From: Mytilus californianus
Lineage: Eukaryota
Direction: 5' to 3'
Assembly (NCBI RefSeq): GCF_021869535.1
Contig: NW_026262712.1
Location: forward strand, 90,458,001 to 90,522,000
DNA length: 64,000 nt
Below the pieces are notes generated by a model. The model did no database searches. It saw only the letters and a list, made by a program, of their open reading frames with translations, and was not told the origin of the DNA. Numbering within the stretch: position 1 is the first letter of the stretch; each line of letters starts with the position of its first letter. This document shows, in pieces, positions 24,451 to 62,776 of the stretch. A program made the translations under genes and the position numbers.

Positions 24451-27400
24451 TTAAATATTTTCGTCGAATCCAATCCGTCCAAAATTCAAGGCAATGCCAA
24501 AGGAACTATAAAATTCCAATATAGTTTTGTTACCTAGTGGTATAAGAAGTTTTTGAATGCAAGTTACTGCTTCTGGTAGCTTAGATTTTTTATGTGTCTT
24601 GTTAAAATCCACTTCCATAGAAAAGTCGTAAGTTGGCACGTCATCCAGACCAGTTATGAACTGAAACAACCTTGATGCTTCCTTGTCTGTAAATTAAGAA
24701 TTACGATTATAATACGATTTAAAAAAATACCATTATTTTTAACGATGTAAAAATGAAGGGATGTTGGGTGTCTGCCAGTGAGACAATTTTCCACCAGGGA
24801 ACAAATGACAAAGATAGAGCATGAAATTTTAATAATTTTGCAATTTCAGAGGCCAAATAATATATCTTCTCTTATCTGAATATATTTATTGAACCACCTT
24901 ACTTGTCCTGTGGAAATTTAAGTTGTTAAACCCGCCCCCTTTCCTTATTAACATTTTGCAGATCAATTGACTTGGAGAACTTTTATTCAATCAAAGACAT
25001 TATTTTGCTAACTTTTTAAGAACACTTCATTAGTTTTCACGTGTGTGCATGTCGTGATCATCACATAATACTTAACCTCTCGTAGGACTTAAACTCACCC
25101 TTTTTCGGTTGGTAAATATTTTGTATTTTTTTTCTTTGTTTGTTTGTCTTTTGTTGTCTGTTGTTTATCTTTTATCCCCATTTTGCATATTGTTGTCAGT
25201 CCTTATTCGACTTAAAATTCTTGATTGGCCATTTTTGGATTCTTAAAAGAGAGGTAAAAAATACCAATGGGACATTCAAACTCATAAGTCGAAAATAAAC
25301 TGACAACGCCATGGCAAAAAAAGAAAAAGACCAAAAGACAAACAACTGTCAACAAAACACCACATAAATTAAATACTAATGCTGGGAATTTGATTATTCT
25401 TAGCATAAATAATGTTCAATATACCCTCTAGATCATCGAGGCACTTCAAGGTAAACTTCTTTGCTTTTTCTTCATCTGCGTTTCCTGTTTCTAACACATG
25501 CACTTGAGGTGTCAATTTTTCTTTGATGAACTGAGCAGTTGTAACACGTTTGCTCCGAACAAGAAGCAAATGTTCAAATTCAGGTAGTTGTTTAACTTTG
25601 TCTAGAAACTGGAGACAGTTAAGACCAAGTCTGATTTCGTTTAACGATGTAGATCTTTTGTCCACGAGGTCCCACTGCAGCAGTGTTTGTACATAGTATA
25701 ACCTGTTGTCGAGCTGAATTAAAAAGAGAATCTTGTATATTAAAGTCACGTGAGCGCCATATTCAATACAAGAATGACTTGTTTGTAGCAGATCTTTTAA
25801 TCATTAAAATTTCTCTTGATTAAAGTTTTGAATGTAAAGGACTAAGAATGGTTCTTCTTCAATGATTCACTTATTTTGGAAATTAAAAAATTAAATTGCA
25901 ACTGTCTTGAAAAATGTTGGAATACCAAGACATATTAATGCCTTCAAAATGGCTACTCTATACATGTTGATGTGGACATTCATGAAAAATTGGGGTCTGA
26001 TAGATACATTACAGGTAGAGGCAGAAAAGGCTTCTTTTCTAGGTACTTTTGATGGCGTGTTGTCTCGACACGACAGAAAGATGAGTAAGCATGCCTTTTG
26101 CAAATGTACTTCAAACTTGTACTACAAATCTAGAACTGTAAGTTCTGTAGCAGTAAAATAATATTACAGGTTGCACTTTGTAAATACAGCAGTTTCTCTA
26201 ACCACGCCTTTTTTGGGGAGATATTTAATATTCATAGATATGTTTTTGTTTACCTACTGGTTCCCAGATATGATCTCTATGTTTCATCTCATAGAGACAC
26301 AACTTGGGAATTTTAGCAGTATAAATACTCATGGATGGCGGCCAAATTGATTTCTGAGGAAGACCTACAGTGAAGGGAGGGTTGTACAGAATTTTAGTAT
26401 AAGTTTTAACTTTTCGAAGTTCGAGGCATATAAATATTGAAAATATGCCGCACAGCCCTTTGTTTTTACCTTTGAAAAAAAAAGTAGTGCATATGAACTT
26501 TCCATTCTAGGATATAATTTTCTACGAAACTTCCTAGTAAAAATGGCACAATTTTTGACGTAAAAGGAGTTCCTATGGGAAATTGCGTTGTCAACATTTA
26601 CAGACAGTATTTAAGCAGTTGTATATTATTTATGTGAACTACCTGTAAAATAATTTTACTAAAATGAACATATGCAAAAACAGTGTAAAATACATTTGAA
26701 TCTTAATTCCGTTTGCTTTTAGTGTTATGATACCTTTACCAATACGTATAGTGACCATGTCTGTACAAGACCATCCACAGTTGTCCATAAATCTCTCTGT
26801 ATCTTCTCCGATTGTTCTGTTTAACTCTTCCTGGGAGTCAGCAGCATTAATCTGTTTTTACAATTTTGATAAATATTATAACATTAATAAGATTTCAAAT
26901 ACTCATTTTTTCAGTTTATTTACTTGTTAAATCATATTAAAAAAAAAAGAATGAATAACATGATTTTTTTTCAGAGATTTGATTGTTAAAGCACACTTAT
27001 TACAAAATATATACAATTTAGTACAAATAGCAACAGATAAAAATTCAAACAAATTCATCACATACATGTTCTTAAGTTTGACCTGATCTATACTCAGTAT
27101 GGCATTGAAATAAAGTTTTGTAATGACACAATAAAGGAAAAATTGGTTTAATGGCATCAACATTTTATCAAAAAAAATAAATGAATAACAGCTCCTGGGA
27201 ACAAAAAAATTACCAAGATGTTTTATCAACAAATTATTCAGTGGCCTTATTATATTAATGAAACTAAAGATTTGTTGAAAGGCTCACATATAAAGTAGCT
27301 AGAAATAACGCTGAGCATTCTTTATAAATCGAAATTTATAACAATTGGGCCAAATCAGTCTGTCATTTAGGTGGCTTGTGTGTTGTCTTTTTTTTCATAA

Positions 27401-28819
27401 TCCGCTATAGCTAAATCGTTCGTGCGGGTGTTCGTTCAATCGTTTTGTTCATATCTACATGTATGAAAGTTTCAGAATTTCACTCCTGGTTTTTTGGGGG
27501 ATTCTTATTTCTCAATCATTAGCTTCTTTGATACTGTTTTGTGGTTTGATGGTTTTTCTTTTCGTGTCTTTTTTAATAAGGTTGTCTTTCCTTTGACATG
27601 TTTTGATTATGTATCATCTATATTATATATATACCTTATCAATATAATCCTTCAGATAAGAGTTTACGATGAACAATGTACTTAATTCATGCTCATACTC
27701 TCGTCCACGAAAATAACTCAAAACAAATGGCGGGAAAAATGGAAATCCTTGGCCACCATGTAACGCCGAGATAACAATTGTCTTTCCAAATCCATGGAAA
27801 ATTTCCCCGGCAATAGCAGCCTTGTTGTAAACTGGTAACAAATATCCTCCTTGCCCTTCGAACATATTCAAATCTGACTTTTTGAAATCATCCAAAAGTA
27901 AAGTGAAAAATTCTCTAGTTGGTCCCCCAAAGTCCACTACCCTTTCGCCACGTCCTCCAGAGGTAAAGTTTACATCAAAACGGGAAAACTCAATTTTGGG
28001 TGTCTTTATCAAGGGTAATGCTACTTTTCTCATCTGTGCTCTATCAATTACTAATTCTTTCTTCCTATCTGTTTGTAACATCTGTAGTTCTTCAATGATC
28101 TTCCCAAACTCATTTCGTGGTACTAAAATATGAAATATCAAAATATTTACTTGTAAAGGAACCTATAGCTACAGTGACGTATATAATTTCAGGCAGAACT
28201 TACAAAGACTGGTGTGCAAAACAATTTCAAATGCACGAATTTGTTGGTATTAAGTGTGACAATAAGGCTTTTATTTCTATGAATCTTATTAAGTTATTAC
28301 TAAGCATTCAGTAAGAATTGGTTGTGGTAGACAATTTTCATATTCTTGATATGTGTTTTTAGAATATGTTTTAGCGTGCTTTTAAATATGAATAATTGAA
28401 GTGATTTGCAAAGTTTAACGTAAGTGAGATACAGTAAACTAATAAATATAGATTTTAACATCAGTAAAGCAACTGCAGGTGTCACAGTTTAGAACTGCTA
28501 ATCCTCCAACATCACTTGAGTTCAACGCAGTGTTTTTCTGGTTTCATGTTATTCAAACTTTAGCTTTTCTGAGTAGTGTTTGTGGGCGTTTGTTTGTTTG
28601 TTTTCATATTATTTCTTTTAGTCAGGGTCAATATTATAACTGTCTTATATTTGTTTTTTGTTGTTTTTTGTTAATCTTTTTTGGTCTAAGTTTGTATTGA
28701 CAGTTGACATCTGTTGTAAGGTATTGGTTCTTATATTCTAGGTTGAAAAGAAAAACGTAACAAAATTAACTTATGAATACCTGTTTTTGTTACTGCTTTT
28801 GATTTTTCTCTGCTCCCAT
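24451..28819 (-). pseudogene. HECT-only E3 ubiquitin ligase gene A (G2E3-like HECT), lesioned; join(28781..28819,27635..28122,26750..26851,25425..25713,24451..24686)
   Basis: Exon set is homologous to gene C (102-nt and 289-nt exons, 236-nt last exon). HECT motifs: GERVVDFGGPTREFF, GGQGFPFF, LFQFITG, LPEAVTC, C-terminal GRIGFDENI*. Two lesions: ATG GGA GCA GAG AAA AAT CAA AAG CAG TAA is one base out of frame with the next exon, and the exon-3 donor reads ACT|ATACGT where the paralogs have GT. It could be a null allele or assembly errors rather than a true pseudogene. Confidence 0.75.
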
Positions 28820-30337
28820 GTTGCTGTACTAAAAAAAGAACCAGAAACTACTGTAGGCAATAAGAAACTAGCCTAATAGACAGCTTCTAATTTTCTTATT
28901 ACGCTCTAAACATTTCATGTTTTGATTAACAAATTTGTGTACCTGATGGAGGTTTTTTTCAAAAAGTAAGTTGTCGTACATCTTGAAATCGGTATCATAT
29001 GTTTAAAATAAGAATGACAACGGAAATTTCTGGATAAAACATTAAAAGGGACAACAGGAATGGCCTTCATAAGCGCACATTACAGAGGACCACATTGAAG
29101 TTGTTACCTCTAAATGTACATTATATCCGTTTAAGAAGCTTACGGTCCTAATTAAGCATGGACAGATACATTAAATCTAAAATTTTGTTAGGAACTGTTA
29201 TGATATATTATCGATTCAAAGTAATGAAATAATGTTTTAGAATATTACGTTTGCTCACATGCGTTTATTATCAGCAAAATAAAATTGTAAGGACTTTGTT
29301 GTGAGGACTTTGTTGTGAGGACTTTGTTGTGAGTAAAGAAAGCATCACATGCATAGTAGAACTTCATTTGTGCAAACAAATACAAAACAAATAATAAAAC
29401 CCACACCGAAAACAACAACAATAACAATGATTATGAACATAATGATAAACAAATATTTTTCTCGTTCGTACCAATTGTAACATAAGCCTTTTTTAGTTGT
29501 AATATAGATGTTTCAGACAAGTGTCAACTCGATTTAAAACTTTTCTTTAGGCAAATCAATCAATCAGTCAATGTTGTCATGACTTAAACCTCGTATCGCC
29601 GTTGGTTTTCGCTCCTTTAATGCTGATATAATTAGCCGTTTCAAAAGCTAAAGGACTATTATGGATAATTTTGTTGTTTGTACTCCAAAATGAAAATAAC
29701 GTCACGTAATTGGTTGAATTGCCGTTGTTTCGGACAATCAAACGTTTTGATGTACGCTTTTGGAAATATTACCCAGAATACATTATATTCTAAAACTGTG
29801 AATGTTCTGATAAAGTTTGTGTAGTTTTGAACTATTGAGACTGACTCAAATAACGCTGAGCTACTGAAGATTTCTTTAAAATGTCGATGTCCTATTATCC
29901 AATAAGGCGCTGCTTGTATTCAGTGTATCTGGTCACACAGTGAGAAGCTGGTGCTGCAATCCAAAATTCTTGATGGCCTGTTTAATGGAACTGTCCAGTC
30001 AAATGTTTGGCCAGAAGTGATTAACAAAGAGAAAATATTCCTGCTTACTATCAATATCACGTGATATTAGATACATGCACATGTATGAAGAGGTCGTACC
30101 TTCAAGCACTTTACTATTGAGCCGTGAGACATTAAAAGTATACATGTAACATGTTCACAACCATAGCCAGTCAGTATTTATACAATTGAAATTAATAATT
30201 GTCTTCTATATATCTGATAACAAAAAATAACGGTTCCAAATTCCAAGCATTTTAGCTTTTTCATATTTTCAATTTCTACTATTATAATGCTTGATAGAAG
30301 ATTTTTCTTTTAAAAGATAAAAAGCTATATACATACC

Positions 30338-30662
30338 TGCAGAATTTACCCAGAAGTTACTTAAAGGTTAATCTTTGGAGCTTTCATACCAGCCGAAAAG
30401 TCAAAAACGAATATTATTAAAACTGATTTATGTGACTTTCAAGTATTAATATCAAAACTTTCCTTCTAAATTATAATGCAATGCATATATTGCCAAGTTT
30501 TAAAATATAAACGAGATCAATCAGATGATTTCATAACTCTGAAGAGGTCTATGTAATTTAAATATCTCTGATATATCTATATATATATATATGTTTTATG
30601 TTGACGAGGAAGTGATTACTTCTTTATGGCTGGTTTCCAATAAATTATAACTAAAAGAAACA
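30338..30662. promoter_or_regulatory. Candidate bidirectional promoter / first non-coding exons of HECT genes A and B
   Basis: Outward-facing strong donors: GCAG|gtatgt on the minus strand (exon ends 30337) and ACAG|gtgagt on the plus strand (exon ends 30663). An (AT)n tract at ~30577-30592 and a GGAAGT motif at ~30607 lie between them. TSS positions are inferred. Confidence 0.5.
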
Positions 30663-30919
30663 GGTGAGTTAAACGTTTTCATGTAAATATTTGTATAAAT
30701 GTTTATATGCACGGTGAAATGTATCCCTCGCATTACTAGTTTCTGTAATGACACATGAATCAGTTGCATTTACATAAATTTTACGCTTTCAATCGTTTTT
30801 CTACGGCCTCAAACTAATTATAAGTAAAACAAACATTTTAATATGTATATAACAAAAATGAACCATGTTTAACTTGCGTACAAAAAATATTTTTATTCTT
30901 TGAACAGGGATCTAACGCT

Positions 30920-33900
30920 ATGGGGAATAAGGAGAGTAGTCTAAAATTAAAAAGTGGTACATCGTCGGAACCAAACGCCAGCAACAACAATATAGAGGCA
31001 AGTATTACATGCAAGATAAGGTTATCTAGTGTGAATGATTCCATTGAACAATGAGTTACAACCATACTCTTGGAATATTTTACAGAAACATATATTTGTT
31101 AGTATATATACTTCAATAAACGGCAACTAAACAATAAAAATTACCCATTAGACATCTAGGGAACTCAACAAAAGACAGATGTGTAAACAATATGTCGCGT
31201 TGTAGACCGTTCAAAATCAATAAAAGTTGTGCATAAATAAAACAGAAACTAGCAAAGATTTCAATTGCAACAACACCCAGTTTTCCCAAGGGAAAAGCTT
31301 CAAACAAGCAAAAACCAAAACCAAATTAAAATACACTTTAATAAGAAAACCACTAAATGCTCATATCTAAGACACGGTATATGATTGCACAGTTCTAGTA
31401 TGACTATAACATAATCGATATTATTATATAAATAACACAAGGTATTTGCATGATGGTTTCACTTATACAGGTAAAATTTTAACCCGGAAACTACTCTGGT
31501 ATAAAGTTTAAGACAAAGAACACTTGAAATTATCATTTCATATGTTATTTTTTCACCATCATGAATTGAGTGGTCGTTACAGTAATTATTTTCCCAACTC
31601 ACTAGTTAGGAGACAACTGTAATTGTAATTTAAGCTTGGCATACGTAAAACGTATATTCTATCTAGTCTTGATTTTAAAATGATTTTTTTCTGAAAATTT
31701 TAAATACACTTGACAACACTTAATTTCCGGCTAGTTTAATCTTTACATTTCAAGTTTTAGATGTTTCTGTTGTGAATTGAATGATAATTGGTAAATATTT
31801 TAAAACAAAAAAGTATTTATGCAGCATGCGAAGAGGGGATGATCAGAAAAAGACACCCGATCTACCTTACCAGCAATATTTAAATTGTATTCACATCATT
31901 TGCAATTTTCGGAAATTTAAATTGTATTCACATCATTTGCAATTTTCGGAAATTTAAATATTGTGAGTTTCATTTCAAGTTGATTTACACAACACCAAAA
32001 CAGAAAATAAGGATGATGCTGTACTATCGATTAATGAAACATAATCTGTACACTCACTCGAGAAAGAGAAAAACCATCACACATAACATACTGTAATGGG
32101 CAATGAAATCAAACAAAGACTATCATAACTGCACAAAAACTCATTGTAAAATACAGAATCAATACAAACATTTAGACATGGGACACATCAAACTATTTGT
32201 TAGATATCTAGCCAGGGAAAAAATCATGAAAAGGGCAAAAAAACAAATAGTCTACATATTAACAATTTCGATAAACATACTCACTGTAAGAGAAAAATGT
32301 GCTGTTATACACATAAAAGAAAGTGATAGCGAAGAATGTATAACTACTTGAATAAATGAGCAGATTGTGACTAATAAACTCGTCATAGATAAATGGTCCT
32401 TTGAAAAATAGCATTATCCATCTAAGGTCAATTTTGCTTGAGAGAGATGGAATCCTAGATTCTTGGTAATATTCATATCAATAAACGGCGAATTAAAAAA
32501 AAAAGATTCTTTTTTATATACAACAACTGCAAAAACTGTGTTACGTGAAACACAGATTACTTTTTAAATGGTGACACTTGTAGTATATCTCAACCTGGTA
32601 ATTTTTTTACAGAACTTGCTACGTAACGCCATTAGAATAGCATATAGCATTCCAATTGCAGGTACGTTGCTTTGCTTTTGATTCAGTTTTTGCAGTGTGG
32701 TTTGTGATATTTTATTTTTATACTGGTGGCGGTGTTCTTTTTCTATATTCGAAGTCGTGTCCGTCTTTTTTCTTTAAGAGATTGTTTTCCATTCAAATTT
32801 TCATATTCTGTCATTACCCAGGGTAAAAGAATTTGCATGTATCAATTTCCTGTACCGATGTCTGTCTTTCTCCAATTTTTTAACTTCGATTTTTGATTGG
32901 CCTTCTTATGTAATTTATGTTTCCTCATAAACTGTCCCATGCATATTCAATGCAGTATGTGTCATGTTTTAAGAAAGGTCTTTTTTTTCTATATTTTGCC
33001 TAACTTTTGAGGGAAATTTATAAACAGAACGATTTTAAGAAAGAAAAATATCTGCATCGTTATCAGAAGTAATGCGTTTTTTATATTTTCTTTCCTAAAC
33101 TTGCATCACAGGTCGTGCGATGTCCTTTTAATTCCGCTAAATATCAAATTGGTCAGGAGAGTATGTAATAATCGTCAGTAAGGTTTTACTAGCTCATTCT
33201 TGTATAAAATGATATAAAATTGCATTGAATTTACAATATAGGATTCATGATTTGCGGTTATTCAATTGAAAAACACGTGACATGTGAACGGAAAATGGTA
33301 TATGTTTTCATCGGCCAATCAGCCACCAGTTGCAAAAAATATTTTTTTTGTTTTAGTATCTCACCCTTGTCATTCGCAGACACCAATGTAATCCCAAGAG
33401 CTCTGAAATTGTCTTCTTTAGCAGTCAAAATTTTAACTATGTCGATTTCATCACTAGCATTGTAGGAAAGGTTGTAAATGATTGGTCCCTAAAATAAATA
33501 GTTAAGATCATGAAAACCTTTCAAAATTTTGTAAATTGTATTGATAAATGAACAAGTAAATATCTTATTTAGACACTTTAGTGCAAAGAGATCATTTGCG
33601 GTTAAATGATTACATTTCGACAGTTTTTGCAGCTTTGAACTAAATTCAAGAAGTTTGAAGCCGTAAAACAAATTGTAAGACAAAATTAAGAAAATATGAA
33701 TACTGATGTCTGATATACTATTGTTTTATGCATATCTAGTGTAAGTTATTTGATAGATTTTAACTGTGAATGCAAGGAGTTAAAAAAGTTGTCTGGTCGT
33801 AAATTCTCCATTTCCGAAAATGTACGTTTATTGGATCTTCATTTCAATTGCAGATTTATATGTTTATCGTGACGAAATAAAACCTTTGATTGACAAGATC

Positions 33901-36900
33901 ATTGGTAAAAGAGAAAGCATGATCAGTATAAAAATTGACAGAAATAAAATATACGAAGAAGCAACAGGTCGATTTGTTGGGAAAGTGAAACAGCTTGCTA
34001 AAATTAGCAGTCCCATGCATGAAAAACCTGTGATCACATTCAATGATACCGACGTGTTAGACGTCGATGGAAGTGGATTCCGAAGAGAGTACTATTCGGT
34101 ATACTTTCGAAAATGCATAGCTAATCTTTTTGAAGGACAAGGAAGACAAATGTTACCAAAGAAAGACTGCACCAAAAAGGATGAGTTGAAAGCTCTTGGG
34201 ATAGCCATCGTTGAATGTGTTTTGAATGGTGATTGTGGGTTTCCTTACCTACACAGAGGAATTTATAAAGCTATAATTGGATGTGATTCTGATGAAATTG
34301 ATCAGCATTGCAATTTAAAAGATATTCCGAACGGCGAGGTTCAAATGGTTGTGCAGCAAGTAAGTTTAAGGCTTCTCCCAGTCCAATTTCGTGCTGATGC
34401 CTGTTCCTCGTGAAATTTATACATAGTGACAGTAACACCTAAATGAATATGTTAAGAATTATCATTTACAGTAGAGTATGATGCTGCAATCTAGGATATA
34501 GCATATAGAAAAGATTCAAGGAGTTGACTTAGCTATATCACACTATAAGAAGCTATACTCCAAGTTGTTCAATGTGTCGGATTTAAGTGATTTCTATTTC
34601 AAAACGTTACGAGAATTAAAAGATTTCTAAAATCAATAAACATGAACAATTCTGGTATGGCTGAAAAAAAAGCCTTAGTTTTTCTTTCAGTTTCAACAAT
34701 TACTATTTTCATTTCCTCTGTAGAGACAAGATAACTCTCACTGTTGTTATTCAAATACATACAAATCAAATAAGTCTATAATCAAATCTTCAACTAAATC
34801 GGTGCTGTCTAACTTGAAATTAAGCTTTAAGCATCTAATTCGTGTTTTTGACATACCGTATTAACATGTTCCCCGCTGCTAGGGTCATGTCATTTGTTTT
34901 ATTAGTATAATTGTATAAATCATACTTTTACAAATAACTATTATTTTTTTAATTAAAGTAGAATTTGTATTTTTAATAAATTAATCATACAGGGTTTTAG
35001 TCTAGTTATGCATTTATATGTACGTGAAATTTTTATATATTTCCAAGAAAAACATAAAGTAACGGCCTTTTAAAACATTAAATTAGTTTTGTGAGATTTA
35101 TTTTTACAGATAAACGATGCAAACACTGACGGAGAAATAACCGAAATTCTCGCTAGCGATTTAGCCTCCTTCATTAGCTATGTTGGATGGCCAGTTGGAC
35201 AAACAGTAACGGTAAAAATGCTATTTGGTTATTTTCAATAAATAGATTTGATTGGCTGTAATTACATATATTAATTTTGATATCGGATATGTTCCTTATG
35301 TCGTAACTACAATACCCTCCCTTTTCTGCTTACCCTTCCGGAGTACCTGAGATCACCCCCAGTTTTTGGTGGGGTTTGTGTTGCTTAGTCTTTAGTTTTC
35401 TATGTTGTGTCATCTGTACTATTATTTGTCTGTTTGTCTTTTTATTTTTGGCCATGGCGTTGTCAGCTTGTTTTCGATCTATGAGTTTGACTGTCCCTCT
35501 GGTATCTTTCGTCCCTCTTTTAAACAGATAACACTATAAAAAGGGCTATTTCATAATACATTTAAAAAAAGAGGCAGAAGATACCAAAGGGACAATCCAA
35601 AATCATGTCGTGAGAAAACCGACAATACCATGGTAAAAAGAAAAAGGGACAAAGAGAAAAACAACAATCTACAAAACACAATACAGAAAACTGAAGACTG
35701 AGCAACATGAACTCCGCCAAAACCTTAACTAAGATGAAAAACAACCATTCGACTTCTTCAAAATCACAATAAATAAGTTTTATTGCAATTGACCAATGCT
35801 GATATATCGTTTTACAAGATATACCTAAAATATCGTACGGATATGTAACACATGAAAAAATTCAGATACAAATACAGGGGAGAGTATTTTATAGAGAGCA
35901 CTTTAAAAGCTTATAAACTATAGCATACACTAATAAACGATAGAATATTAGAAATATCGGAAAAAATAGATTTACTGGTATAACTTATATTTTGGAATTG
36001 CGCACGATCATGCTTGTCTCGGGCAGCTTTTGACCTTTTTATACACTAAAAACGTTGAATGTTTACTGATTCTTATATTAGTCTATGAAAACACAGTCTA
36101 TTTACTAGTAACTGTTGAAATTGAGCTATTGAACGAGCTTTCAGAAATTGCGACTTTTAAAAGATAAACACTTTGTGTTTTGTTTTAATTGTATAAGTTG
36201 TTTTTGTGCTTAGTTCCAATCTAATGAGTCAAACTCTTTTCGACATTTTTACTGTTTATTGTTGTTGCTGTGGTGCTGTTGCATCAGTAGTAGGACATAC
36301 TTTAATCACCAATTTCATGAAGAATTAAAAAAATGCGTGAATGTTTTTCTTCTCGGTTTTTACAAATGAAACTTTAAGTATCTTTTAAGAGTGAATTGGT
36401 GTCTCATAGACATAAATTCGAAATTTATTTCCGTTATTCATATTTAAAACTCCAAATCATCTATCAACAAATCTTACACAGTGTCATCAAATCAGAACAT
36501 ATTTTTTAGATGACTAACCGACATGTGTTGCTGCAGTATATACTCCGATGGTTTATCATAGACCACAGACAAAATGAAATAGACCAGTTACGTCACGGTC
36601 TCAGCTATATGGGATTTCTTGATGCCATTAAATCAAACGACTGGTTTGAACCTTTATTTGTTTACTCAGAACAGTACAGCATTACAGCAAGATACATGAA
36701 AGACAAGCTAAACCCAGTCCTAGAAAAACTGGAAGCCAAAACTGAGAAGGAAATTAACTGTGTAAAGTTTGCTAAAGCTTGCATTGATTCCTTAGATGGT
36801 ACGAATAATAAGTTTGTATGGTTTTTAACTCTGCAGATTGTGAGATGTTATAATTATTCAAACATGAATGTGTCCATTGAAATTTGTACAGGGTTAACTC

Positions 36901-37642: not shown

Positions 37643-38373
37643 TACAGATTTCTGACATACCAAATTGTTTTTGTGTTTATTTTGTTTTTCACTTATTGTT
37701 GTTGCATGCACGAATAAAAGAGAAATCAACTGTGAATTTCCTTAGACAAAAGAATGTTATACCACTCAACACAACAGAAATGAGAGATTACTATTTGGAA
37801 ATCAAGATCATGAAATTGAAGGACGACGAAAACCATATCAGTTGAATAGTTGCAATTAATTTAACGTATAATACTGATTCCAGAGCGCACATGTAATTCG
37901 GGGATGTTTTCAAAAAGTTACGCTCGATAACCAAATGAAGGGAAATTTTGGAAGAAAAAATGTTAATGACAAAAACTTAAGATACTAATCAGTCTTAAGA
38001 CAACTCTTTGTCGATTTAAACTGTTAGATCATTTGCCTCTTATCGTTAACAATGAAATGTTTCATTAATATCCAATTTCACGGCAGGCTTATCAAAGCTT
38101 GAAAATTGGTGAAATTTGTTATCTATTACTATGAGGTCTACTCATAGATATCATGGACATTAAAGCTCACAAATGCTTTAAGGTGTGAAAAATGTGTATC
38201 AGAACGGAAAAAGGATCTTTGTAATATTAATGTTCAATTACACTTTCATAATTTGAGTATGTTTTTGAAAAAGTAATGATTTATTGCGTTTTATTAAGGC
38301 AAAATGTTGAATTAATTTCAAGACTTCACAATACAATACAATCATTGTCCGGTTGTGTCGGTTCATTTAAGAA

Positions 38374-38520
38374 TTGAATGCTTCTTTTTGTAAATCTATT
38401 GGGGTGTAAAAGCGTTGACCAAAGTACATTTTGTATGAAGCGTGGAAGCGCTTCATTCCAAAAATGTGCGCACGGTCAACGCTTTTACAACCCTATAAAG
38501 TTACTAAAAGAAGCATTCAA
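38374..38520. repeat. ~147-bp imperfect palindrome (MITE-like core)
   Basis: TTGAATGCTTCTTTT..GGTGTAAAAGCGTTGACC..ACATTTTGTATGAAGCG / CGCTTCATTCCAAAAATGT..GGTCAACGCTTTTACAACC..AAAAGAAGCATTCAA. Confidence 0.8.
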
Positions 38521-48783: not shown

Positions 48784-51700
48784 ATGGGACAGACTTCGTC
48801 TATACAGAGTCCTCGCATTGATGCAGTTCCTGGTACCTCTAGACGGAGAACAGGTTTGTTTTGTAAAATATTGTTATACACGTTTAGATTAACTGGTCTA
48901 AATCTTTTGGGTTGATTTAACGATTGAAAGTAATTTGATGTTCTAATTGCTAATAAAAAATGAAATATGGACAATTGTGACATCTTAGCCAATTTGATAA
49001 TTGTGCAAACATTAGATATTTATTTTAGAATAAAAAAAAAACAGCTTCCATTCGTGCATGCATGCATGCATTATCTTGTTCTTGAATAAGGAAAAGTGAA
49101 AGAATGATATATTACCAAATTGATTATTAGAATTCACACGGAGGATTTAGAAACCGTCAAAACAAGGAAAATTTCAGGTTTATATGTAAAACAAGTAACA
49201 TGGTAAATTTTCAAGCATTCAACAGGTAAAAATCGAAATGTTAATGAAATCATGTGATGTAAAGAAGTCTAAATTATATAGTTTTTTTCAATCATTTTTA
49301 CATTGATATGTATCTATATAAGTAAAAATATCATTCAGCATACAACTAAATTTGTGATGTCGCTTTACTTATCGGTTTGATATAACTGATTGAAGGTTAT
49401 TACTTCACCAAAAATTTCATATTACATTGTTGAAGTTGTTTTTTACATTCTTTCACTTACATGGTAGGACTCTATAACACATTTAAAAAAATATGACAGG
49501 AATGTATATTTTTTTTTTACAGCTTCGGTACCAGAAACAACCGATGATTTTAAAGCAACCATAGAAAACATTCGCCAACAACAGCATGGAAGGAAGAAAG
49601 TGATTTCTGTCAACAGAGATGACGTCAAAAGTGTTATGTTTCCATACTTGAAAACACCAAACAGTGAGTTTTCTCCTCTTGATATCACATTTGAATGTGA
49701 TGGTGTATCGGAAAAGGCGGTAGACCTGGGAGGACCTAGCAGAGAATTATTTACACTATTATTTCAAGAATTTTTGCAATCGAACTTGGGACTTTTTGAA
49801 GGAAAAGGTGGATTTGTGTTACCTGTGAACAATAAAAAGGCAATCGATGCTCACGTCTTTCGTGCGTTTGGCAAGGCCGTTGTATTATCGCTTAGTACAG
49901 ATCCTCATGGACCTGGATTTCCGTATTTTCCATCATTTATTGTGAGTTACCTCATTGGAAGAGAGTATATACATGAACTGAGCTCATTGTTCCTTGTCAA
50001 CGAATTTCTTAAACAGTTTATCACAGATGTAAGCTTTGAAATGTGTACCCTTTGTCTAAGTTTGATATCTTATTCTAGTTACTTCTCAATAAGCAAATGT
50101 TACTAGATTGCACGACACTTAATGCCATTGTAAGTGGTTTTGATTATCTAACTAGCCGACAACTTAAGAACAATAGGAAATGACTATTTATACAAATATG
50201 AATGGTATTTAGATTGTTATCAATGTGATCTGTCAAAATGTGGTGAAATATTTGTGAGTAAGATTTTTTCAAACGTGTCATCGTTAGCTCCATAAGTAAG
50301 ACATTGTGTTATTACCAAACTTCGTAATTTACCATAATTTTCATTTAACATGAATAATTTTATAACAATATTGTCCTCGATTTAAAACTAAGTTTTTATT
50401 GGAATCAATAATTTATTGAACATGCAGTTTGAAATGATGCATCAAAGTGCACCGAAACTGAAATGACTACCATTGTGATATTTAAATCGTAACTTACATG
50501 TTTCGGCTACTCATTTAAATATCAATTAAATTTGACCTATATTTTCAGATTACAAATGCAACCACTCAGAATGACTTAGATGATATTATGGGCAATGACG
50601 ACGAAAGATTTACAGATAATTGCGGATGGCCAGGGAATGAAAGGGTTACAGTGAGCATGAATAATTTCATTGTCTTGATAATTTACCCCCTTGAATTATT
50701 TGGGTATTTTACATTTTGAACCTATTGAATGTTTCATGTTTCCAAAACGATACAGATTTTTTCTTCAAAATATTGAATAAACAATCACACTTTTTGCAAT
50801 CATTGTCTTTTTTCAATTATGTATTATATATATGTTAAGTAATTTTGTTTCCAGCATATTTAACCTCATATGTACACCGGATATCCCAATCCAAATCCGC
50901 GGAGGGGTCCAAATCCCGAGGAGCAATTTTAATTTGTTTAGTGCAATTCGTAAATAAAATCTGGATCCGATTCCCATGTAGGATTATGCTCCTTGTGAAT
51001 CGGAATCAGATTTCAATTACCTTCCGCGTTTCGGTCTTGTGCAATTGCTCTTCATGATCCGGGTCCCTCCACGGATTTTGGATCGGGATACCCGATGTGA
51101 TGTGAAATAGTCTGATTGCATATTTATATTATCTTTTAGATGTCTAACAGATGGTCATTTGTGCAAACCTTACTACAATGGGATTTGGTTGATAAACGAA
51201 GAACTGCTCTTGATGATATGAAAAAAGGATTAAATACTTTCAACTTTCTTGATGATACAAAGTCTCTCCCCGAATTTGAACGCATATTTCTTTTGAGAAA
51301 TAAGCAAGAAACAACGGCGAATTTCATACAGAAGAAACTTATTCCAGAAGTACAAAAATTACGTACCGAAAACCAAGAAGAAGAAAAGGCACAGAAACAA
51401 ACAGTTAAATGTCTTCAAATATTAGAAGGTGCGTAGAAATGCTTGTGTAATTTGCCCTAAGCGAATTTTAAAATGAAATATTCATGATTGAATTGCATAT
51501 TATAATGTTTTAATATTCTATAAAAACGTACTAATATTTGTTTGTTTAATGTCATTGCTTTTATCATGAGCAGATACATCAAATTTAAATTTCAAATGAA
51601 ACATCATTTAAATGCTTGAGCACCAGATGTACCATAACAAAATGTAACACCGAAAAACATTAAAATACTTTAAAGAAAATTATGGAGCTTTTAAAATCCT

Positions 51701-51970
51701 TGTATGAACTTTAAAGTATTTGCTTCATTTTCAGACGAGGAGGCTGCTTATCTGTTTCAGTTTATTACCGGACTTGACGATGTACCGCCATACAACTTTT
51801 CCATCCAGGTGGCGTTTAATCGAAAGAATAAAAAAGCGACATTACCTGAAGCTATAACTTGTATTCAGAGACTTCTCATTCCTCTGGGTAACAAATCGAG
51901 ATTAGACTTTTATAAATCATTTGACATTGCAATAAAAATGGGCAGACTTGGATTTTCAGATGATTCATAG
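48784..51970 (+). CDS. HECT-only E3 ubiquitin ligase gene C (G2E3-like HECT, ~400 aa); join(48784..48853,49523..50028,50549..50650,51140..51428,51735..51970)
   Basis: All junctions are GT-AG with consistent phase. N-terminus MGQTSSIQSPRIDAVPGTSRRRT|ASVPE. HECT motifs: EKAVDLGGPSRELF, HGPGFPYF, LFQFITG, LPEAITCIQRLLIP, tail GRLGFSDDS*. The last exon is identical to gene A at 50 of 78 residues (hand count). Confidence 0.92.
50874..51098. mobile_element. ~225-bp foldback/MITE-like element in intron 3 of gene C
   Basis: ACACCGGATATCCCAATCCAAATCCGCGGAGGGGTCC..GAGCAATT pairs with AATTGCTC..GGGTCCCTCCACGGATTTTGGATCGGGATACCCGATGT; GC-rich against an AT-rich background. Confidence 0.7.
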
Positions 51971-57211: not shown

Positions 57212-60200
57212 ATGGGTAATCAACCACCAAAAGAGAAAAACCCCAGTGGTACAGTTCGTGGGCTAGAGGTACAACTACTAATTCACAAAATTATCAAGCT
57301 GCTATTTACTTAACAAAATCAGATTATTTTTCTTTTGTTTTTATATATAAATAAGAAGATATAGTATGAGAGCCAATGAGACAACTATCCATCCAAGTCA
57401 CAATGTGTAAAAAGTAAACAATTATAGGTCAAAGTACGGCTTTTAACATGGAGCCTTGGCTCACACCGAACAACAAGCTATAAAGGACCCCAAAAAGACT
57501 TGTGTAAAACAATTCAAACAGGAAAACCAACGGTCTAATCTATATAAAAAACGAGAAACACTCATGAACCACACAAACAAACGACAACCACTGAACAACA
57601 GGCTCCTGACTTAGGACAGGTGCATAAAGATGCAGCGGGTTACATGTAACGTTTTTTTTTTTGAAATTGTAAAAGTTGATTTTAGTGTATAGTATTAGTT
57701 ACACAGTCTGCTAGTGACCTAATACGATATATATGGGGTCAGTAAATTCCATATGGAGTGAGATCGAAACGAATTTATTTTACCGACTATCTTAACATGT
57801 GGCATTTAGACTATTAAAGTGATCAAGTCTTCAATATAAAGAACATACTTCCATTGGTCTATACAAAAACAAATGCCAACAATAACAACTTGTGTTTTCT
57901 GCATTTATTTCAATCGTTCATCACAAATTTCTTCATCTGTTGTCCGCGGGTGAAACGTTTCAGATTTTTCCTCAACGCCGTGTTTTTTTTTATATAGGGA
58001 CGTAACACCATTACTAACCGTGTATTAAAATAAACGACGCCTACTAACCCCATATGAAATATACAGGTCTTCACGTGGTCGCTTTTAACTAATGATATTC
58101 CTAGAAATGTATAAGAGGTAAGATAATTCTGCATACTGGATCACTGGACTATTGAGAACATCATCATCTATTCCTGATCAAGTAAATATATCGATATTGC
58201 TTAAAATAATATTGTACAATGAAACCTAATCTTTACTATGTTGTGGTTTGTAGACTTTTGTTTATCTTTTGGTCGTTTTTTGTTTTGTCAGTTTGTCTTC
58301 GATTAATGAGTTTGAACATCCTTTTTGTATCTGCCACCTCTCTTTTGCATCATATATTTGTCGTTGATTAATTTAAACACTACTTATTGTCATAACATAG
58401 AATATTGTTTTGTATTGTTATAGGATCTTTTAAAGGATGCTATGAGGTTAGCCCATGTTGCAGTATCAGGTACGAGCATTACGCATGTTAAGTATATCGT
58501 AATTTTGAAATCTTTTAACAATTATATAAATTCAATAATACCGCTTTTTAAATTCTTAAATGTCTTTGTGATATTGCACAAATGGATGTAGGTGTATTTC
58601 GTTATTATACTAATACATGAAGCAATAAAAAAAAAACTTTTTATTTTACAAATACTTATTTGCAAGTCAGAATTATCTACAAAACATTTCTATTTTCTAT
58701 AGTATTTAAAAAAACAACAACAAAATGTCATTTCGGTAAGTTTCTTTAAGATCCCGTGTGTCGTACTTTGTGAACAAAAATAATTGTAGGTTGAGACTGG
58801 TATCCGGCCGTTATTTGCCAAGTCTCATAATAGCTGTATATTCCGAAGGAATACTAAATATCTTACGGAGGGAACCAACTTAATGTAGGTTATACTTCAA
58901 TGATACAACAACCAGTGACATAAAACAAGAGTTTAGTGCATCTTCAGATGAATTCCATGGATTGTAAGCTGAGTAGTAGAAGTACCGCACAATTGCATTC
59001 ATAAAGATCTTTGGACCTTGGTGAAAATAGCAGCTAAGGGCACTGAGCTTTACTAATATACAATATCAGCTTGCAAAATTGTGTATTGTAGGATGTGACA
59101 TCCTAATGTTCGTATCTAATATATAGATATACACCAATAAAGTTTTCGGATACATTAAAATCCAATGTTATTGACATTTTGTTATTTCCTTTTCCAACAT
59201 AAGAATAGCAGTAAATTAACTATTAAGCTGGGATCATATTCTAATCTGTGTCGATTATGCAAGATGTGGCGAATAAGTCACATAACCACGTTTCAGTGCT
59301 TATCGGGGATTGCTTACTTGCGCGTTATGTGAAAAATAAATTAATTGATAGAATCTTAAATGAACAGTTGATTTACAATGAAAATTAAAACGTTTTGGCA
59401 AGAAAAGCTGTATTTGTACTATTGATAGCAGTTTGTGTGAATTTAGAATAATTTCAAAAAATTCGTGGTTATAAAAACCGCCATATGCAAAGGAATGATC
59501 CAATCCAACAATCGGTCATTTTTACCCCAAATAAATTCTAATAAGTTAATACATGACGTTGTATTTCACCTGCTCCTATACTGGCGAGCAGTGCACCAGC
59601 ATCCCAGGTAGGCTAATATAATATGAGATTTATTTGCTTTATATTGCATTTTGTTCTTTTCAAAATGTTCACTTTAGTTGTTATTTTAACAACAGATTTA
59701 TATTCCTATCGTGAGGGTATTAAACCAGCTATTGACCAAATAACTGGAAACACAGAAAAAGTTGTTCAAATGGAAGTGGACAAAAAGAAAATTTATGAAC
59801 ATGCCATGGCTCGTTACATTGGAAAGATTAGGACCATGCGCACTGGAATGAAACCTACGCATGAATGTCCTGTGATTACTTTTATTGGAGAAGATGCCAA
59901 TAAGTTTGATGTCGACGGAAGTGGATTTCGGAGACAATATTATTCAATGTTCTTTCAAGAGTGTCTGAAAAGACTTTTTGAAGGTTCCGGTAGAAACCAG
60001 CTTCCAAAACATGATATAACGAAAAAAGATGAATTTACTGCCTTAGGTATTGCGATAGTAGAGGCCATTTTGAATGGGGACTGTGGATTTCCATATCTTA
60101 ACAAAGCTGTATTTATGTTAATACTTGAAAAAAGTGATGATGAAATAGAACAAAGCCTGAACATTAGTGACATACCCCTAGGTGATGTATGGAATACAGT

Positions 60201-62776
60201 TAAAAAGGTAAGTACATTTCCCCACACTTAAAAATTAAGCTATAAATCCTATTAAGTCTAAAAAATCTTAAATGATTAACAAAAAGTATCAAATATCTGA
60301 CATCAGTACCAAATTTACCAATGGAAACATAGTATGATAACGCGATTGACTATCACTGACAAGGGTATTTACTGATCTGACTTTAAAAGGGCATACAAAC
60401 GTGTGGCGGGATTAAAGTAGCACTCAATCCTCCACCTTTTAATCTCGACCAGTATAACAACAGTTGGTTGATAGAAAAGCGTATACAAATGAGTTCATGG
60501 AATGCACTCATCATCAAAGAGTTTAGTACAGAATTAAAGAAAAAATGTTTGTCGTGTTTAAAATTATGGATAGGCGATCTAAAGGGGAAAGTCCTAAACT
60601 TGTTTGCCTGATATATCATACGATATGTACAACATAAAGCTTAGTCTATAATGCCATTTTTGTCAGATTTTGTGATTGGAATCATACTTCCACAATAAAT
60701 TCTTATATGCAATAGTGTGATAAAATTTAGAAGAATGATTCTGAAATTAATATTTATATCTTGTTGTAATTTCTAAAAGTAATACGCCCATCGCGTCTGA
60801 GACGTCACTGCAAACAAACACATATCGTACCAAATGATAAACACACACACCATCACTACTAAGGAAAGGCAAAATGTCGGCATACTCTTTTTTTTTTACA
60901 AAAAATGTGTTTATGAAGTTAAACATGAAGTTTCAGGCAAGCGTAAGCAAAATATATTTGTTAGGGGTATATATCTGAATTAATTTGTAGATTCAAGATG
61001 CCGAAAAAGAGTGCGATATGACTGATGCCGTTTCGGAAGACAGTGCAAACTTTTTGAATTTTATTGGTTGGCCGGGAGGGCAAGCAATGACGGTAAGTCT
61101 TTTTATTCTTTTATCATAGTTGTGGTGCCAGATATTAAAGTGCTTCTCAGTCAAAAATACATTGAAGTGTTGCTAGGGAAAAAAAATCAGTTTGCAAACA
61201 TTCGGTACAGTTACTGGGTAGAGAGTTATGTTATGTTATCATATATTTAGATAGACTGGAAGGATCCGTAGATGCCATCGGTAATATTTTTTATACATAT
61301 AAAAGCATTGAGATATGATTAAAGACAACCACTTCGTACAGACGAATTAACTAGTTTAGTTTTTTTTTTATTCAACTCTATCCTTGTTAAAAATCTCTAT
61401 TACTGGAACAAAAAGGTACATAGATAAAAATTAGGGAACAGAAAAAGGCACAATACTCTACGTCACCGATTGGACTAAATGACTTTCTTGCAAGTTGCTA
61501 GTATGTTTCAATATTGCCATGTACCTGCAGTCATGAAATAAATGTTTTAAAATGACAGTCAATCACCAGTTGTACCCTCGTGAGTCCTAAAAGTAAACAT
61601 AATATATGGACATTGATTTTAACAAGTCTAAATTGAAAACCTTGGACATTGGACATTGATTTTATATACACATGTATATGCTTTGAAGTTTAGTTCATTT
61701 ATTATTCAGGCTATTATTCCCTATTCACAAGTGATAAATAGACAACAAAAACACGGATACACTATTGTATTTGCATTTCTTACAACTCAGTATGCATATT
61801 AGTCTTATTTCTTGTTTTAGCTGAAAAACAAACATTCTTTGCTGCATTACATTACAAAATGGTTTGTCATAGATCAAAGACTTTCAGAGGTCGAACAGCT
61901 GAAAAAAGGTCTTAACTACATGGGGTTTCTGGACACTATTAGAACAAATACGTGGTTTGAACCTTTATTTGTGTATTCGGAACAATATAGTATCACTGCC
62001 AATTATGTGAAGCAGAAATTAGAACCACTGCTAGACAAACTGCCTACAAAAACCGATATACAAAGAAAAGCACAGAAACAAGCAAAAGTGTGCATTGGTG
62101 CCCTTGATGGTTAGTATGATTAGAATTATATGCTTTTCAGTATCAAATCATTTGATTGAATATACCATTCTTTTAAACATTTCTTAAACGGATTAGAGGC
62201 ATTATTTGAATATACCTCATACTACTGGAATATTTCGAAAACTCCATTGGTCTTTTTTCCCAGCGTTCATTTTTATTAACAATGAATGTAGAAAAACAAA
62301 CAAAAAGAATTTTGATCCACAGCAATTGGTACCTATTTCTTGTTTAATATTAGGTCTGTGATTCCTATACAAAAATAAGAAGATACCGTGCAACAATCAA
62401 TATTTTTTTATTTCAGTGGTTAAAAAAATTGTCATATGGAATACGATTCAAATTTTCACATGGTTCGTTTGAGCTGTCCGGTTGGCTCATTTAATAATCA
62501 AATTCATGAAAACAGTCCAAAAATGTTTTACGTGTTTCAATCTGTTGTTTGTTTATTTCAGAAACGCAAGCACGACTGTTGTTTGCATTCATTACAGGAC
62601 TTTATGATCCTCCTATCATAGAAGAAACCTTCTGTGTAGAATACAACATGAATCCGGATATGTGTTATCCGACAAGTTACACATGTTTAAATAAACTTTT
62701 CCTTCCATTGGGTAATAAAGACATTGACAAGTTCAAGGAATCTTTCTGGGCAGCATTATACGACGTTCAGAGATAA
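57212..62776 (+). CDS. HECT-only E3 ubiquitin ligase gene D (G2E3-like HECT, ~406 aa); join(57212..57268,58424..58469,59696..60207,60991..61092,61821..62109,62562..62776)
   Basis: All junctions are GT-AG with consistent phase. N-terminus MGNQPPKEKNPSGTVRGLE|DLLKDAMRLAHVAVS|DLYSYREG. HECT motifs: FDVDGSGFRRQYY, GDCGFPYL, LLFAFITG, YPTSYTCLNKLFLP; ends FWAALYDVQR*. Exon-for-exon paralog of gene B. Confidence 0.92.

What the first reader, a model, noticed from the sequence alone, without database searches (positions are those of the whole stretch)
24451..62776. Cluster of four stand-alone, MG-initiated HECT E3 ligases organised as two A-type/B-type pairs
Seen: four ~385-410 aa genes consist only of a short N-terminal peptide plus a G2E3-type HECT domain. 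They share 102-nt and 289-nt exons with identical phases. A and C form one subtype (5 coding exons, GGPxRE motif, FQFITG, Phe tail). B and D form the other (6 coding exons, an extra 46/49-nt exon, DGSGFRR motif, no Phe tail). Each A-type gene lies directly beside a B-type gene. Established: HECT ligases normally carry large N-terminal substrate-binding modules (WW, RLD, or PHD/RING in G2E3). Inference: these are membrane-anchored, receptor-less HECTs kept as an obligate two-gene unit, like paired immune genes. I know of no description of such a system.
Basis: partly seen in the sequence, partly recalled or inferred. Interest (0 to 1): 0.88.

Follow-up and report, generated by a model that had tools for sequence, protein, structure and literature searches.

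The report
Paired lipid-tagged minimal HECT ligases, mussel
This mussel locus holds four small ubiquitin-ligase genes (three intact, one broken here) that are little more than a catalytic HECT domain with a probable lipid-anchor signal, and its two gene types have sat head-to-head in six bivalve genera from lineages that diverged very long ago, which hints that they work together but does not show it.

Summary
The window is the Mytilus californianus reference. My spliced models of B (411 aa), C (400 aa) and D (406 aa) are letter-identical to RefSeq proteins. All four genes share the 102-nt and 289-nt exons, the subtype motifs and an invariant catalytic Cys.

Gene A is a null allele in this sequence. 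Its MG exon is frameshifted with a stop at codon 10, and the conserved donor of the 102-nt exon reads AT. An intact MG-initiated A transcript exists in another sample. A is a frameshifted pseudogene in M. trossulus.

The proteins are a disordered N-terminal peptide of about 25-35 residues plus a complete extended HECT domain, nearest to G2E3. Transcript-like contigs have in-frame stops just upstream of the MG codon.

New here: the two subtypes are ancient bivalve-wide clades. One AC gene and one BD gene lie head-to-head in Mytilus, Saccostrea, Tegillarca, Potamilus, Dreissena and Mactra, while the flanks are not conserved. Most members start MG with an N-myristoylation consensus.

"Obligate" and "immune-like" are not supported. 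B persists without A under strong purifying selection (dN/dS 0.08), scallops pair AC with a third HECT lineage, copy number is low, and tail loss in B/D is mussel-specific.

Verdict: an uncharacterised variant of HECT-only, G2E3-like ligases; moderately interesting.

The parts
24451..24686 (-). Gene A, last coding exon (236 nt): C-lobe with catalytic Cys (LPEAVTC) and GRIGF tail
   Evidence: Pfam HECT hit. 100% identical to RefSeq LOC127705422.
25425..25713 (-). Gene A, 289-nt exon
   Evidence: Same length and phase as in B, C and D.
26750..26851 (-). Gene A, 102-nt exon whose conserved donor reads AT (ACT|atacgt) instead of GT
   Evidence: The intact transcript protein P0175 reads VT|LD across this junction. 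The NCBI model is reproduced only by an AT-AC intron (108+283 nt).
27635..28122 (-). Gene A, large N-lobe exon (488 nt) with the GGPTRE motif; the NCBI model starts at an internal Met at 28081
28781..28828 (-). Gene A, damaged MG exon. Frame 0 reads MGAEKNQKQ-stop. Frame 2 reads ...REKSKAVTKT, which matches the intact P0175. This implies a deletion of about 16 nt that shifts the frame.
30337..30663 (.). Divergent A/B promoter region: putative first non-coding exon of A (donor CAG|gtatgt at 30337, minus strand) and first exon of B (donor at 30664, plus strand), about 330 bp apart
   Evidence: The region aligns to M. trossulus at 76%. The upstream ATG at 30591 is closed by TAA after 19 codons. 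Exon ends are inferred from splice consensus and orthologous RefSeq models, not from reads.
30908..30997 (+). Gene B, MG exon (ATG at 30920, 78 coding nt, MGNKESS..., GC donor GAG|gcaagt)
   Evidence: The full model is identical to XP_052065692.
32613..32661 (+). Gene B, extra 49-nt exon (NLLRNAIRIAYSIPIA)
33854..37642 (+). Gene B, core exons 33854-34359, 35110-35211, 36510-36798, 37431-37642 (DGSGFRR motif, catalytic Cys, no C-terminal tail)
48784..51970 (+). Gene C, five coding exons 48784-48853 (MGQTSS), 49523-50028, 50549-50650, 51140-51428, 51735-51970; 400 aa
   Evidence: Identical to XP_052065696. TAG TAG lies 5-6 codons upstream of the ATG.
57212..62776 (+). Gene D, six coding exons 57212-57268 (MGNQPP), 58424-58469 (46 nt), 59696-60207, 60991-61092, 61821-62109, 62562-62776; 406 aa
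   Evidence: Identical to XP_052065691 isoform X2. RefSeq also lists a 436-aa isoform X1 that starts at an upstream ATG.

Best explanation
**What it is.** The locus is the Mytilus californianus copy of a bivalve-wide gene pair that encodes two old paralogous lineages (AC and BD) of minimal HECT ubiquitin ligases. Each protein is a disordered N-terminal peptide of about 25-35 residues joined directly to a complete extended HECT domain of the divergent G2E3-like class. The catalytic cysteine is invariant.

**Origin of the four copies.** Ancestrally one AC gene and one BD gene sat head-to-head. The intergenic region is short (0.3-1.4 kb) in five of the six genera examined, and there it probably acts as a shared promoter. 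In the mussel lineage both were duplicated, giving A+C (AC) and B+D (BD).

**State of the copies.** B, C and D are intact and under strong purifying selection. A is being lost: it is a null allele in this assembly, it is intact and expressed in another sample, and it is a pseudogene in M. trossulus.

**Proposed mechanism (inferred, not shown).**
1. The initiator Met is removed and Gly2 is N-myristoylated. This tethers a bare catalytic HECT domain to membranes, so substrate choice comes from location or from partner proteins and not from a built-in recognition module.
2. The conserved divergent arrangement keeps the two paralogs co-expressed, possibly because they act together.
3. In mussels the BD proteins have lost the C-terminal tail that other HECTs need for the final transfer step. 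They may therefore be altered or dependent enzymes.
For: **HECT identity and completeness**
- Pfam PF00632 scores above its cut-off over 1-303 of 306 positions.
- Alignment to crystallised HECT constructs starts at about residue 20.
- AlphaFold models have pLDDT 80.5 and 85.2. Foldseek gives G2E3 as top match (E 1e-15), then NEDD4-family HECT domains.
- The catalytic Cys is invariant in 25 sequences.

**No upstream domain**
- In-frame stops lie just upstream of the MG codon in spliced contigs L001 and L002.
- TAG TAG lies upstream of C's ATG, and B's upstream ORF is closed.
- RefSeq models are identical to mine.

**MG / myristoylation consensus** is conserved in both clades and in all four stitched partner genes.

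**Two clades:** AC 100/98 and BD 99/97, each spanning Bivalvia.

**Head-to-head AC/BD pairs** occur in Saccostrea, Tegillarca, Dreissena, Mactra, Potamilus and Mytilus. The flanks are not conserved.

**Selection:** dN/dS is 0.08 for B and 0.10 for C.

**State of A:**
Against: - No lipidation, membrane localisation, E3 activity, co-expression or interaction was measured.
- D (MGNQPP) fails the PS00008 consensus, and RefSeq lists a longer isoform of it.
- The Dreissena and Mactra BD models do not start MG.
- Human G2E3's HECT domain is reported to be catalytically inactive (as cited in PMC3673628), so activity cannot be assumed.
- Pairing is not universal. Scallops have a third-group HECT next to AC, in tandem. 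In Solemya the AC and BD genes are far apart. In Mytilus, C/D are in tandem and B survives without A.
- In Potamilus the annotated CDS starts are 13.6 kb apart, so a shared promoter is not evident there.
- Whether the Logan contigs are RNA-derived is inferred from their lack of introns.
Confidence: 0.6

Rival explanations
1. The enzymes are independent, and the adjacency is historical. AC and BD arose by an ancient inverted tandem duplication. They stay together only because they share promoter elements or by inertia. Each ligase works alone on its own substrates, and the pairing has no functional meaning.
For: - B is retained under strong constraint while its head-to-head partner A decays.
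- C and D are in tandem, not divergent.
- Scallops and Solemya lack the AC/BD head-to-head arrangement in the loci I saw.
- Potamilus has 13.6 kb between the CDS starts.
Against: - The head-to-head orientation with one member of each clade persists in six genera of Pteriomorphia, Palaeoheterodonta and Imparidentia.
- The flanking genes changed over the same span. Such persistence is unusual without constraint.
- In Mytilus an AC copy (C) remains 11 kb from B, so B is never without an AC-type neighbour.
Confidence: 0.3
2. The proteins are pseudo-enzymes or adaptors. Like the HECT domain of vertebrate G2E3, these divergent HECT domains, especially the tail-less mussel B and D, no longer transfer ubiquitin and act as scaffolds or regulators.
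For: - G2E3 is the nearest characterised relative, and its HECT domain is reported as non-functional (cited in PMC3673628).
- Mussel B, D and P0155 end right after the last C-lobe helix, with no G-F tail.
Against: - The catalytic Cys and the surrounding LPxxxTC...PLGN motif are invariant in all 25 aligned members of all clades.
- dN/dS is about 0.1.
- BD proteins outside mussels keep the tail.
Confidence: 0.15
3. This is a fast-evolving immune or transposon-associated HECT expansion. The cluster would be a lineage-specific, variable defence locus or a set of HECT genes captured by mobile elements, as noted for other HECT genes elsewhere in this genome.
For: - Gene A shows functional versus null variation between samples and species.
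- Earlier notes report HECT genes inside transposons elsewhere in this genome (not tested here).
Against: - There are only 3-4 copies.
- 1:1 orthologs are annotated in five Mytilus species in the same 90%-identity clusters, and the same gene order is seen in M. trossulus.
- The clades mirror bivalve phylogeny.
- Purifying selection is strong.
- No transposase or integrase ORF and no HECT fragments occur elsewhere in the window.
Confidence: 0.05

Closest known systems
G2E3 (G2/M phase-specific E3 ubiquitin-protein ligase) and the 'G2E3-like' (GL-Metazoa) HECT families of Grau-Bove et al. 2013 (PMC3673628)
   Same: - It has a divergent class IV-type HECT domain.
- G2E3 is the best Swiss-Prot structural match.
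- NCBI names some orthologs 'G2/M phase-specific E3 ubiquitin-protein ligase-like'.
- Short HECT-only G2E3-like clusters exist in chordates and molluscs.
   Different: - It has none of the PHD/RING-like zinc fingers that define G2E3.
- Identity to G2E3 is only 19%.
- The catalytic Cys is invariant here.
- It has an MG start with a myristoylation consensus.
- It is organised as a conserved head-to-head pair of two paralog lineages.
- No mollusc was in the 2013 survey, and the M. coruscus HECT survey lists G2E3 as 'not found' (PMC11353290).
NEDD4-family HECT ligases (NEDD4, Rsp5, WWP, Smurf)
   Same: - The HECT fold is bilobal and complete, including the N-terminal alpha1' extension.
- Both are membrane-directed ligases.
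   Different: NEDD4 ligases reach membranes through a C2 domain and bind substrates through WW domains. These proteins have neither, and would rely on a lipid anchor and external partners.
COL4A1/COL4A2-type head-to-head paralog pairs with a bidirectional promoter (PMC12141075)
   Same: Two paralogs are kept in divergent orientation over very long evolutionary spans. In collagen IV the reason is that the products co-assemble.
   Different: The protein family is unrelated, and co-assembly of the two HECT paralogs has not been shown. This is an analogy only.
Head-to-head paired plant NLR immune receptors
   Same: The A/B pair has a divergent orientation with a short shared intergenic region.
   Different: There is no sensor/helper domain logic, no expansion and no diversifying selection. 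The pair is old and conserved, not fast-evolving.

Membership tests
HECT E3 ubiquitin ligases (Pfam PF00632) | HECT domain detected above the curated threshold | tested here: met
   37.8-68.7 bits against a cut-off of 23.9 for the RefSeq A model and the M. trossulus orthologs of B, C and D; the last exons of A, B and C hit directly. P0175.
HECT E3 ubiquitin ligases (Pfam PF00632) | Catalytic cysteine in the C-lobe | tested here: met
   The Cys is invariant in alignments A1 (22 sequences) and A2 (25 sequences). It is present in all four window genes.
HECT E3 ubiquitin ligases (Pfam PF00632) | Bilobal HECT fold with the N-terminal alpha1' helix extension | tested here: met
   AlphaFold models have pLDDT 80.5 and 85.2. 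Foldseek gives probability 1.00 to NEDD4, Rsp5, WWP2 and AREL1 HECT structures. The extension concept is from PMC9547173.
HECT E3 ubiquitin ligases (Pfam PF00632) | Conserved C-terminal tail with an aromatic residue near position -4 | tested here: inconclusive
   A and C have G-F at position -5. B and D have no tail. BD proteins of other bivalves have G[FY]G. The functional consequence was not tested.
HECT E3 ubiquitin ligases (Pfam PF00632) | Ubiquitin thioester formation and transfer | not testable with these tools
   This needs biochemistry.
G2E3 orthologs | N-terminal PHD/RING-like zinc fingers (PHD_G2E3, zf-HC5HC2H) | tested here: not met
   Pfam finds only HECT. Only about 25-35 residues precede the HECT domain.
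G2E3 orthologs | HECT domain closest to G2E3 among characterised ligases | tested here: met
   the top four Swiss-Prot hits are G2E3 (E 8.5e-16 to 4e-14), at only 14-19% identity.
N-myristoylated proteins | Initiator Met followed by Gly | tested here: met
   Met for B, C and D. Not met for A in this window, but met in the intact A transcript P0175.
N-myristoylated proteins | PROSITE PS00008-type consensus G-{EDRKHPFYW}-x(2)-[STAGCN]-{P} | tested here: inconclusive
   B (GNKESS), C (GQTSSI) and P0175 (GAEESY) fit. D (GNQPPK) does not. 14 of the 18 database AC/BD proteins that start MG fit, and so do three of the four stitched partners.
N-myristoylated proteins | Covalent myristate on Gly2 | not testable with these tools
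   This needs metabolic labelling or mass spectrometry.
Paired (sensor/helper-like) immune gene units | Head-to-head arrangement of two different subtypes | tested here: met
   A/B here, and AC/BD in five other genera. C/D are in tandem.
Paired (sensor/helper-like) immune gene units | Rapid or diversifying evolution, copy-number expansion | tested here: not met
   dN/dS is 0.08-0.10. There are 1:1 orthologs in five Mytilus species and 2-4 copies per genome in the loci seen.

The most novel reading that the evidence does not exclude
The AC and BD proteins form an obligate two-subunit, membrane-tethered HECT machine that is very old in bivalves. Both are myristoylated and co-expressed from a shared divergent promoter, and they act as a hetero-oligomer. 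One paralog supplies full ligation chemistry. The other (tail-less in mussels) acts as a regulatory, chain-extending or substrate-presenting subunit. That would be a HECT architecture without a built-in substrate-binding module, and to my knowledge one without a described counterpart.
Probability: 0.2. Interest if true: 0.8.

Novelty: new variant of a known kind. Interest (0 to 1): 0.55.

Why it matters
HECT ligases are usually explained as a catalytic domain aimed by large N-terminal modules. This family may instead be aimed only by a lipid anchor and possibly by a paralogous partner. It has been conserved under purifying selection across bivalves, yet it is absent from the published mussel HECT inventory.

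If the myristoylation and the partnership are real, the family offers a naturally minimal HECT system for studying how bare HECT domains are localised and regulated. It would also be a rare case of a ubiquitin-ligase paralog pair held head-to-head across lineages that separated very long ago. The ongoing loss of gene A gives a natural knockout series within Mytilus.

If neither holds, these are simply small, annotated but uncharacterised G2E3-like ligases.

Tried and rejected
Rejected for this sequence. It has a stop at codon 10 and the wrong phase, and no upstream in-frame ATG even when spliced to the putative first exon or when the 48-nt exon is skipped.
2. **A 118-nt version of A's third exon.** Rejected because it breaks the frame. 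Enumerating all junctions showed only three options: a 96-nt GT-AG exon, 135-nt GC-AG exons, or NCBI's AT-AC 108/283 solution.
3. **The GT donor at +82 of B's MG exon.** Rejected because it breaks the frame. The GC donor at +78 gives the RefSeq protein.
4. **Pfam on single exons.** This found HECT only in the last exons, so full-length orthologs were needed.
5. **Treating A as simply dead.** Revised after I found the intact 389-aa transcript protein P0175.
6. **A wider conserved synteny block.** tblastx of the flanks against the window gave only noise-level HSPs of 22-27 bits.
7. **Rooting the three clades with distant long HECT proteins.** The order of AC, BD and the third group stayed unresolved (68/89).
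8. **Literature searches** for myristoylated HECT ligases, head-to-head HECT pairs and G2E3-like genes in bivalve immunity. Nothing relevant came back.
9. **Pfam on the upstream neighbour gene** (first 600 residues of the merged M. edulis model). No family was found.
10. **Potamilus flanks of 10 kb.** They did not reach the partner gene, so orientation was taken from record coordinates instead.


Full report
**What the window is.** The sequence is AT-rich (about 32% GC) and its coding regions are split into exons. tblastn with database proteins shows that NCBI's Mytilus californianus LOC127705422 is 99-100% identical to gene A's exons. My spliced models of B (411 aa), C (400 aa) and D (406 aa) are letter-identical to RefSeq XP_052065692, XP_052065696 and XP_052065691 of M. 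californianus.

**Checking the observation.** Exactly four HECT-like genes lie in the window.
- All share a large N-lobe exon (488-512 nt, entered in phase 1), a 102-nt exon, a 289-nt exon and a last exon of 212-236 nt with canonical splice sites.
- A and C carry GGPxRE, FQFITG and a G[RK]xGF tail. B and D carry DGSGFRR, an additional 49-nt or 46-nt exon, and end straight after the last C-lobe helix.
- B starts at 30920 (MGNKESS). Its 78-nt coding part must use a GC donor, GAG|gcaagt, because the nearby GT donor breaks the frame.
- C starts at 48784 (MGQTSS) and D at 57212 (MGNQPP).
- A(-) and B(+) are head-to-head, with first-exon donors at 30337 and 30664. C and D lie in tandem on the plus strand.

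**Gene A is broken in this sequence.**
- ATG GGA at 28819 runs into TAA after nine codons, and its 39 nt are out of phase with the next exon.
- No in-frame ATG exists further upstream, with or without the 48-nt exon.
- The conserved donor of the 102-nt exon reads AT.
- NCBI's 357-aa model is reproduced from this sequence only by starting at an internal Met (28081) and using an AT-AC intron of 108+283 nt. That start would cut through the alpha1' helix, which PMC9547173 describes as an obligate part of HECT domains.
- The same 90%-identity cluster holds P0175, a 389-aa protein from a 1.5-kb intron-less contig. It starts MGAEESYLQEKSKAVTKTV, reads VT|LD across the conserved junction, and is 95.9% identical to the window's A.
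- The window's exon reads MGAE in one frame and REKSKAVTKT in another. The reference allele therefore carries a frameshifting deletion of about 16 nt, as well as the donor change.
- In M. trossulus the A ortholog is unannotated. Its match is split over several frames with 22 gap positions, and it lacks the ATG.
- No A-type protein from M. edulis, M. galloprovincialis or M. coruscus sits in the cluster.

A is thus being lost in mussels: it is intact and expressed somewhere, null here, and dead in M. trossulus.

**What the proteins are.**
- Pfam finds only HECT, above threshold and nearly end to end in the AC type.
- phmmer against PDB sequences aligns residues of about 64-396 with crystallised HECT constructs from their residue of about 40-50 onward.
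- The AC model (P0141) has pLDDT 80.5 with residues 1-26 disordered.
- The BD model (P0156) has pLDDT 85.2 and pTM 0.81 with residues 1-16 disordered. A low-confidence helix from the extra exon comes next, then the alpha1' helix and the bilobal fold.
- Foldseek ranks G2E3 first among reviewed proteins (E about 1e-15, 19% identity), followed by NEDD4-family ligases. Solved HECT domains match with probability 1.00.
- The catalytic Cys is invariant in 25 aligned family members.

These are bare extended HECT domains with a short N-terminal peptide. They resemble G2E3 only in the HECT domain and lack its zinc fingers.

- Intron-less Logan contigs that encode whole family members have in-frame stops 9 nt (L001) and 6 nt (L002) upstream of the MG codon.
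- In the window, TAG TAG precedes C's ATG, and the upstream ATG in B's first exon is closed by TAA after 19 codons.
- The exhaustive search with C's first large exon found the nearest full-length relatives to be 390-400 aa, with the match starting at residues 20-27.
- Longer models exist only as alternative RefSeq isoforms that use upstream ATGs (D isoform X1, M. trossulus B isoform X1), or as an obviously merged M. edulis model of 1275 aa.

**The MG start.**
- Of the 26 database-held proteins listed, 18 begin MG, all from the AC or BD clades, and 14 of those 18 fit PROSITE PS00008.
- The first exons of all four partner genes that I stitched from genomes also begin MG (Dreissena AC, Saccostrea BD, Mactra AC, Tegillarca BD).
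- Mya has an internal MGAVST behind an annotated extension.
- Exceptions are the Dreissena and Mactra BD models, the cut Solemya BD model and the third group.
- D's MGNQPP does not fit the consensus.

Conservation of this start in two clades that separated before the bivalve radiation argues for constraint. N-myristoylation is the obvious reading, but it is an inference.

**Family structure and the pairing.**
- Word-index searches returned only bivalve proteins, mostly 'uncharacterized' or 'G2/M phase-specific E3 ubiquitin-protein ligase-like'.
- A maximum-likelihood tree gives two clades, AC (100/98) and BD (99/97). Each holds protobranch, pteriomorph, unionid and imparidentian members. A+C and B+D are mussel-lineage duplicates.
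- With distant outgroups a third clade appears (scallops and Solemya, starting MA[CS]AQR), and the order of the three clades is unresolved.
- Fetching genomic neighbourhoods showed one AC and one BD gene head-to-head in five other genera:
  - Saccostrea: about 1.4 kb between CDS starts.
  - Tegillarca: about 0.6 kb.
  - Dreissena: about 0.4 kb.
  - Mactra: about 0.4 kb.
  - Potamilus: 13.6 kb; consecutive locus tags, orientation taken from record coordinates.
  
  This matches A/B in the window.
- tblastx of the flanks against the window gave nothing beyond noise, so the pair itself is what is conserved.
- The exceptions matter. In Mizuhopecten and Pecten the AC gene's neighbour is a third-group HECT in tandem. 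In Solemya the annotated AC and BD genes are far apart on the same scaffold.

**Selection.** Between M. californianus and M. trossulus, dN/dS is 0.08 for B (409 codons), 0.10 for the first 191 codons of C, and 0.44 for A. B, C and D have 1:1 orthologs in five Mytilus species, and M. trossulus keeps the same gene order.

**Interpretation.**
- Shown: the gene structures, the HECT-only architecture, the two clades, the recurrent head-to-head arrangement, purifying selection on B and C, and decay of A.
- Inferred: N-myristoylation and membrane tethering, a shared bidirectional promoter and co-expression, and any physical or functional partnership.

The collagen IV COL4A1/COL4A2 pair is a precedent in which head-to-head paralogs are retained across animals because the products co-assemble (PMC12141075). 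That is an analogy, not evidence.

Against an obligate unit: B remains constrained while A is lost, although the AC-type gene C stays 11 kb away. The immune analogy also finds no support in copy number or evolutionary rate. Loss of the C-terminal tail is specific to mussel BD proteins and might mark altered chemistry there.

**Known or new.** HECT-only and G2E3-like families are recognised (PMC3673628), and these genes are annotated in RefSeq, so the genes themselves are not new.
- I found no paper describing myristoylated HECT ligases or conserved head-to-head HECT pairs.
- The M. coruscus HECT inventory reports 22 genes with G2E3 'not found' (PMC11353290), so this family seems to have escaped description.
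- Earlier notes of this scan on the same stretch pointed me to the A/B first exons. Other notes mention HECT genes inside transposons elsewhere in the genome. I did not test those, and this locus shows no transposon features.

**Verdict.** I class it as a new variant of a known kind, with moderate interest.

Noticed in passing
window 30998-32612 (first coding intron of gene B): This is a GC-AG intron. The only frame-preserving donor after B's MG exon is GAG|gcaagt, and it reproduces the RefSeq protein exactly.
   Followed up: yes
window 30591-30650: A short upstream ORF (MFYVDEEVITSLWLVSNKL-stop) lies in B's first exon. In M. trossulus the equivalent ATG stays open, and RefSeq isoform X1 starts there (439 aa). 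That would mask the MG start.
   Followed up: partly
window 25243-25379, 35300-35760, 54367-54550, 7792-7937: A dispersed repeat of about 150-450 nt (71-78% identity between copies) sits in introns of A and B and in intergenic DNA. Copies also occur in the M. trossulus locus. It is probably a SINE- or MITE-like element.
   Followed up: partly
window about 16400-23950, plus strand: This is the upstream neighbour gene, the ortholog of a 420-aa M. trossulus gene with no Pfam family. The ORF at 16815-17261 matches the N-terminal part of the M. edulis model CAG2189597 (P0192, 1275 aa). That model wrongly merges this gene with the B and C orthologs.
   Followed up: partly
L011 3984-6958 (M. trossulus, minus strand): An unannotated, frameshifted pseudogene orthologous to gene A lies head-to-head with LOC134685308.
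   Followed up: yes
L004 1-372; P0173, P0174, P0012, P0017: A third clade of short HECT-only proteins (329-368 aa, starting MA[CS]AQR in scallops) lies next to the AC gene in Mizuhopecten and Pecten. Its relation to AC and BD is unresolved.
   Followed up: partly
window 57122-57211: No in-frame stop lies in the 60 nt upstream of D's MG codon. RefSeq lists a 436-aa isoform X1 that starts 30 codons upstream, which would prevent N-terminal lipidation of that isoform.
   Followed up: partly
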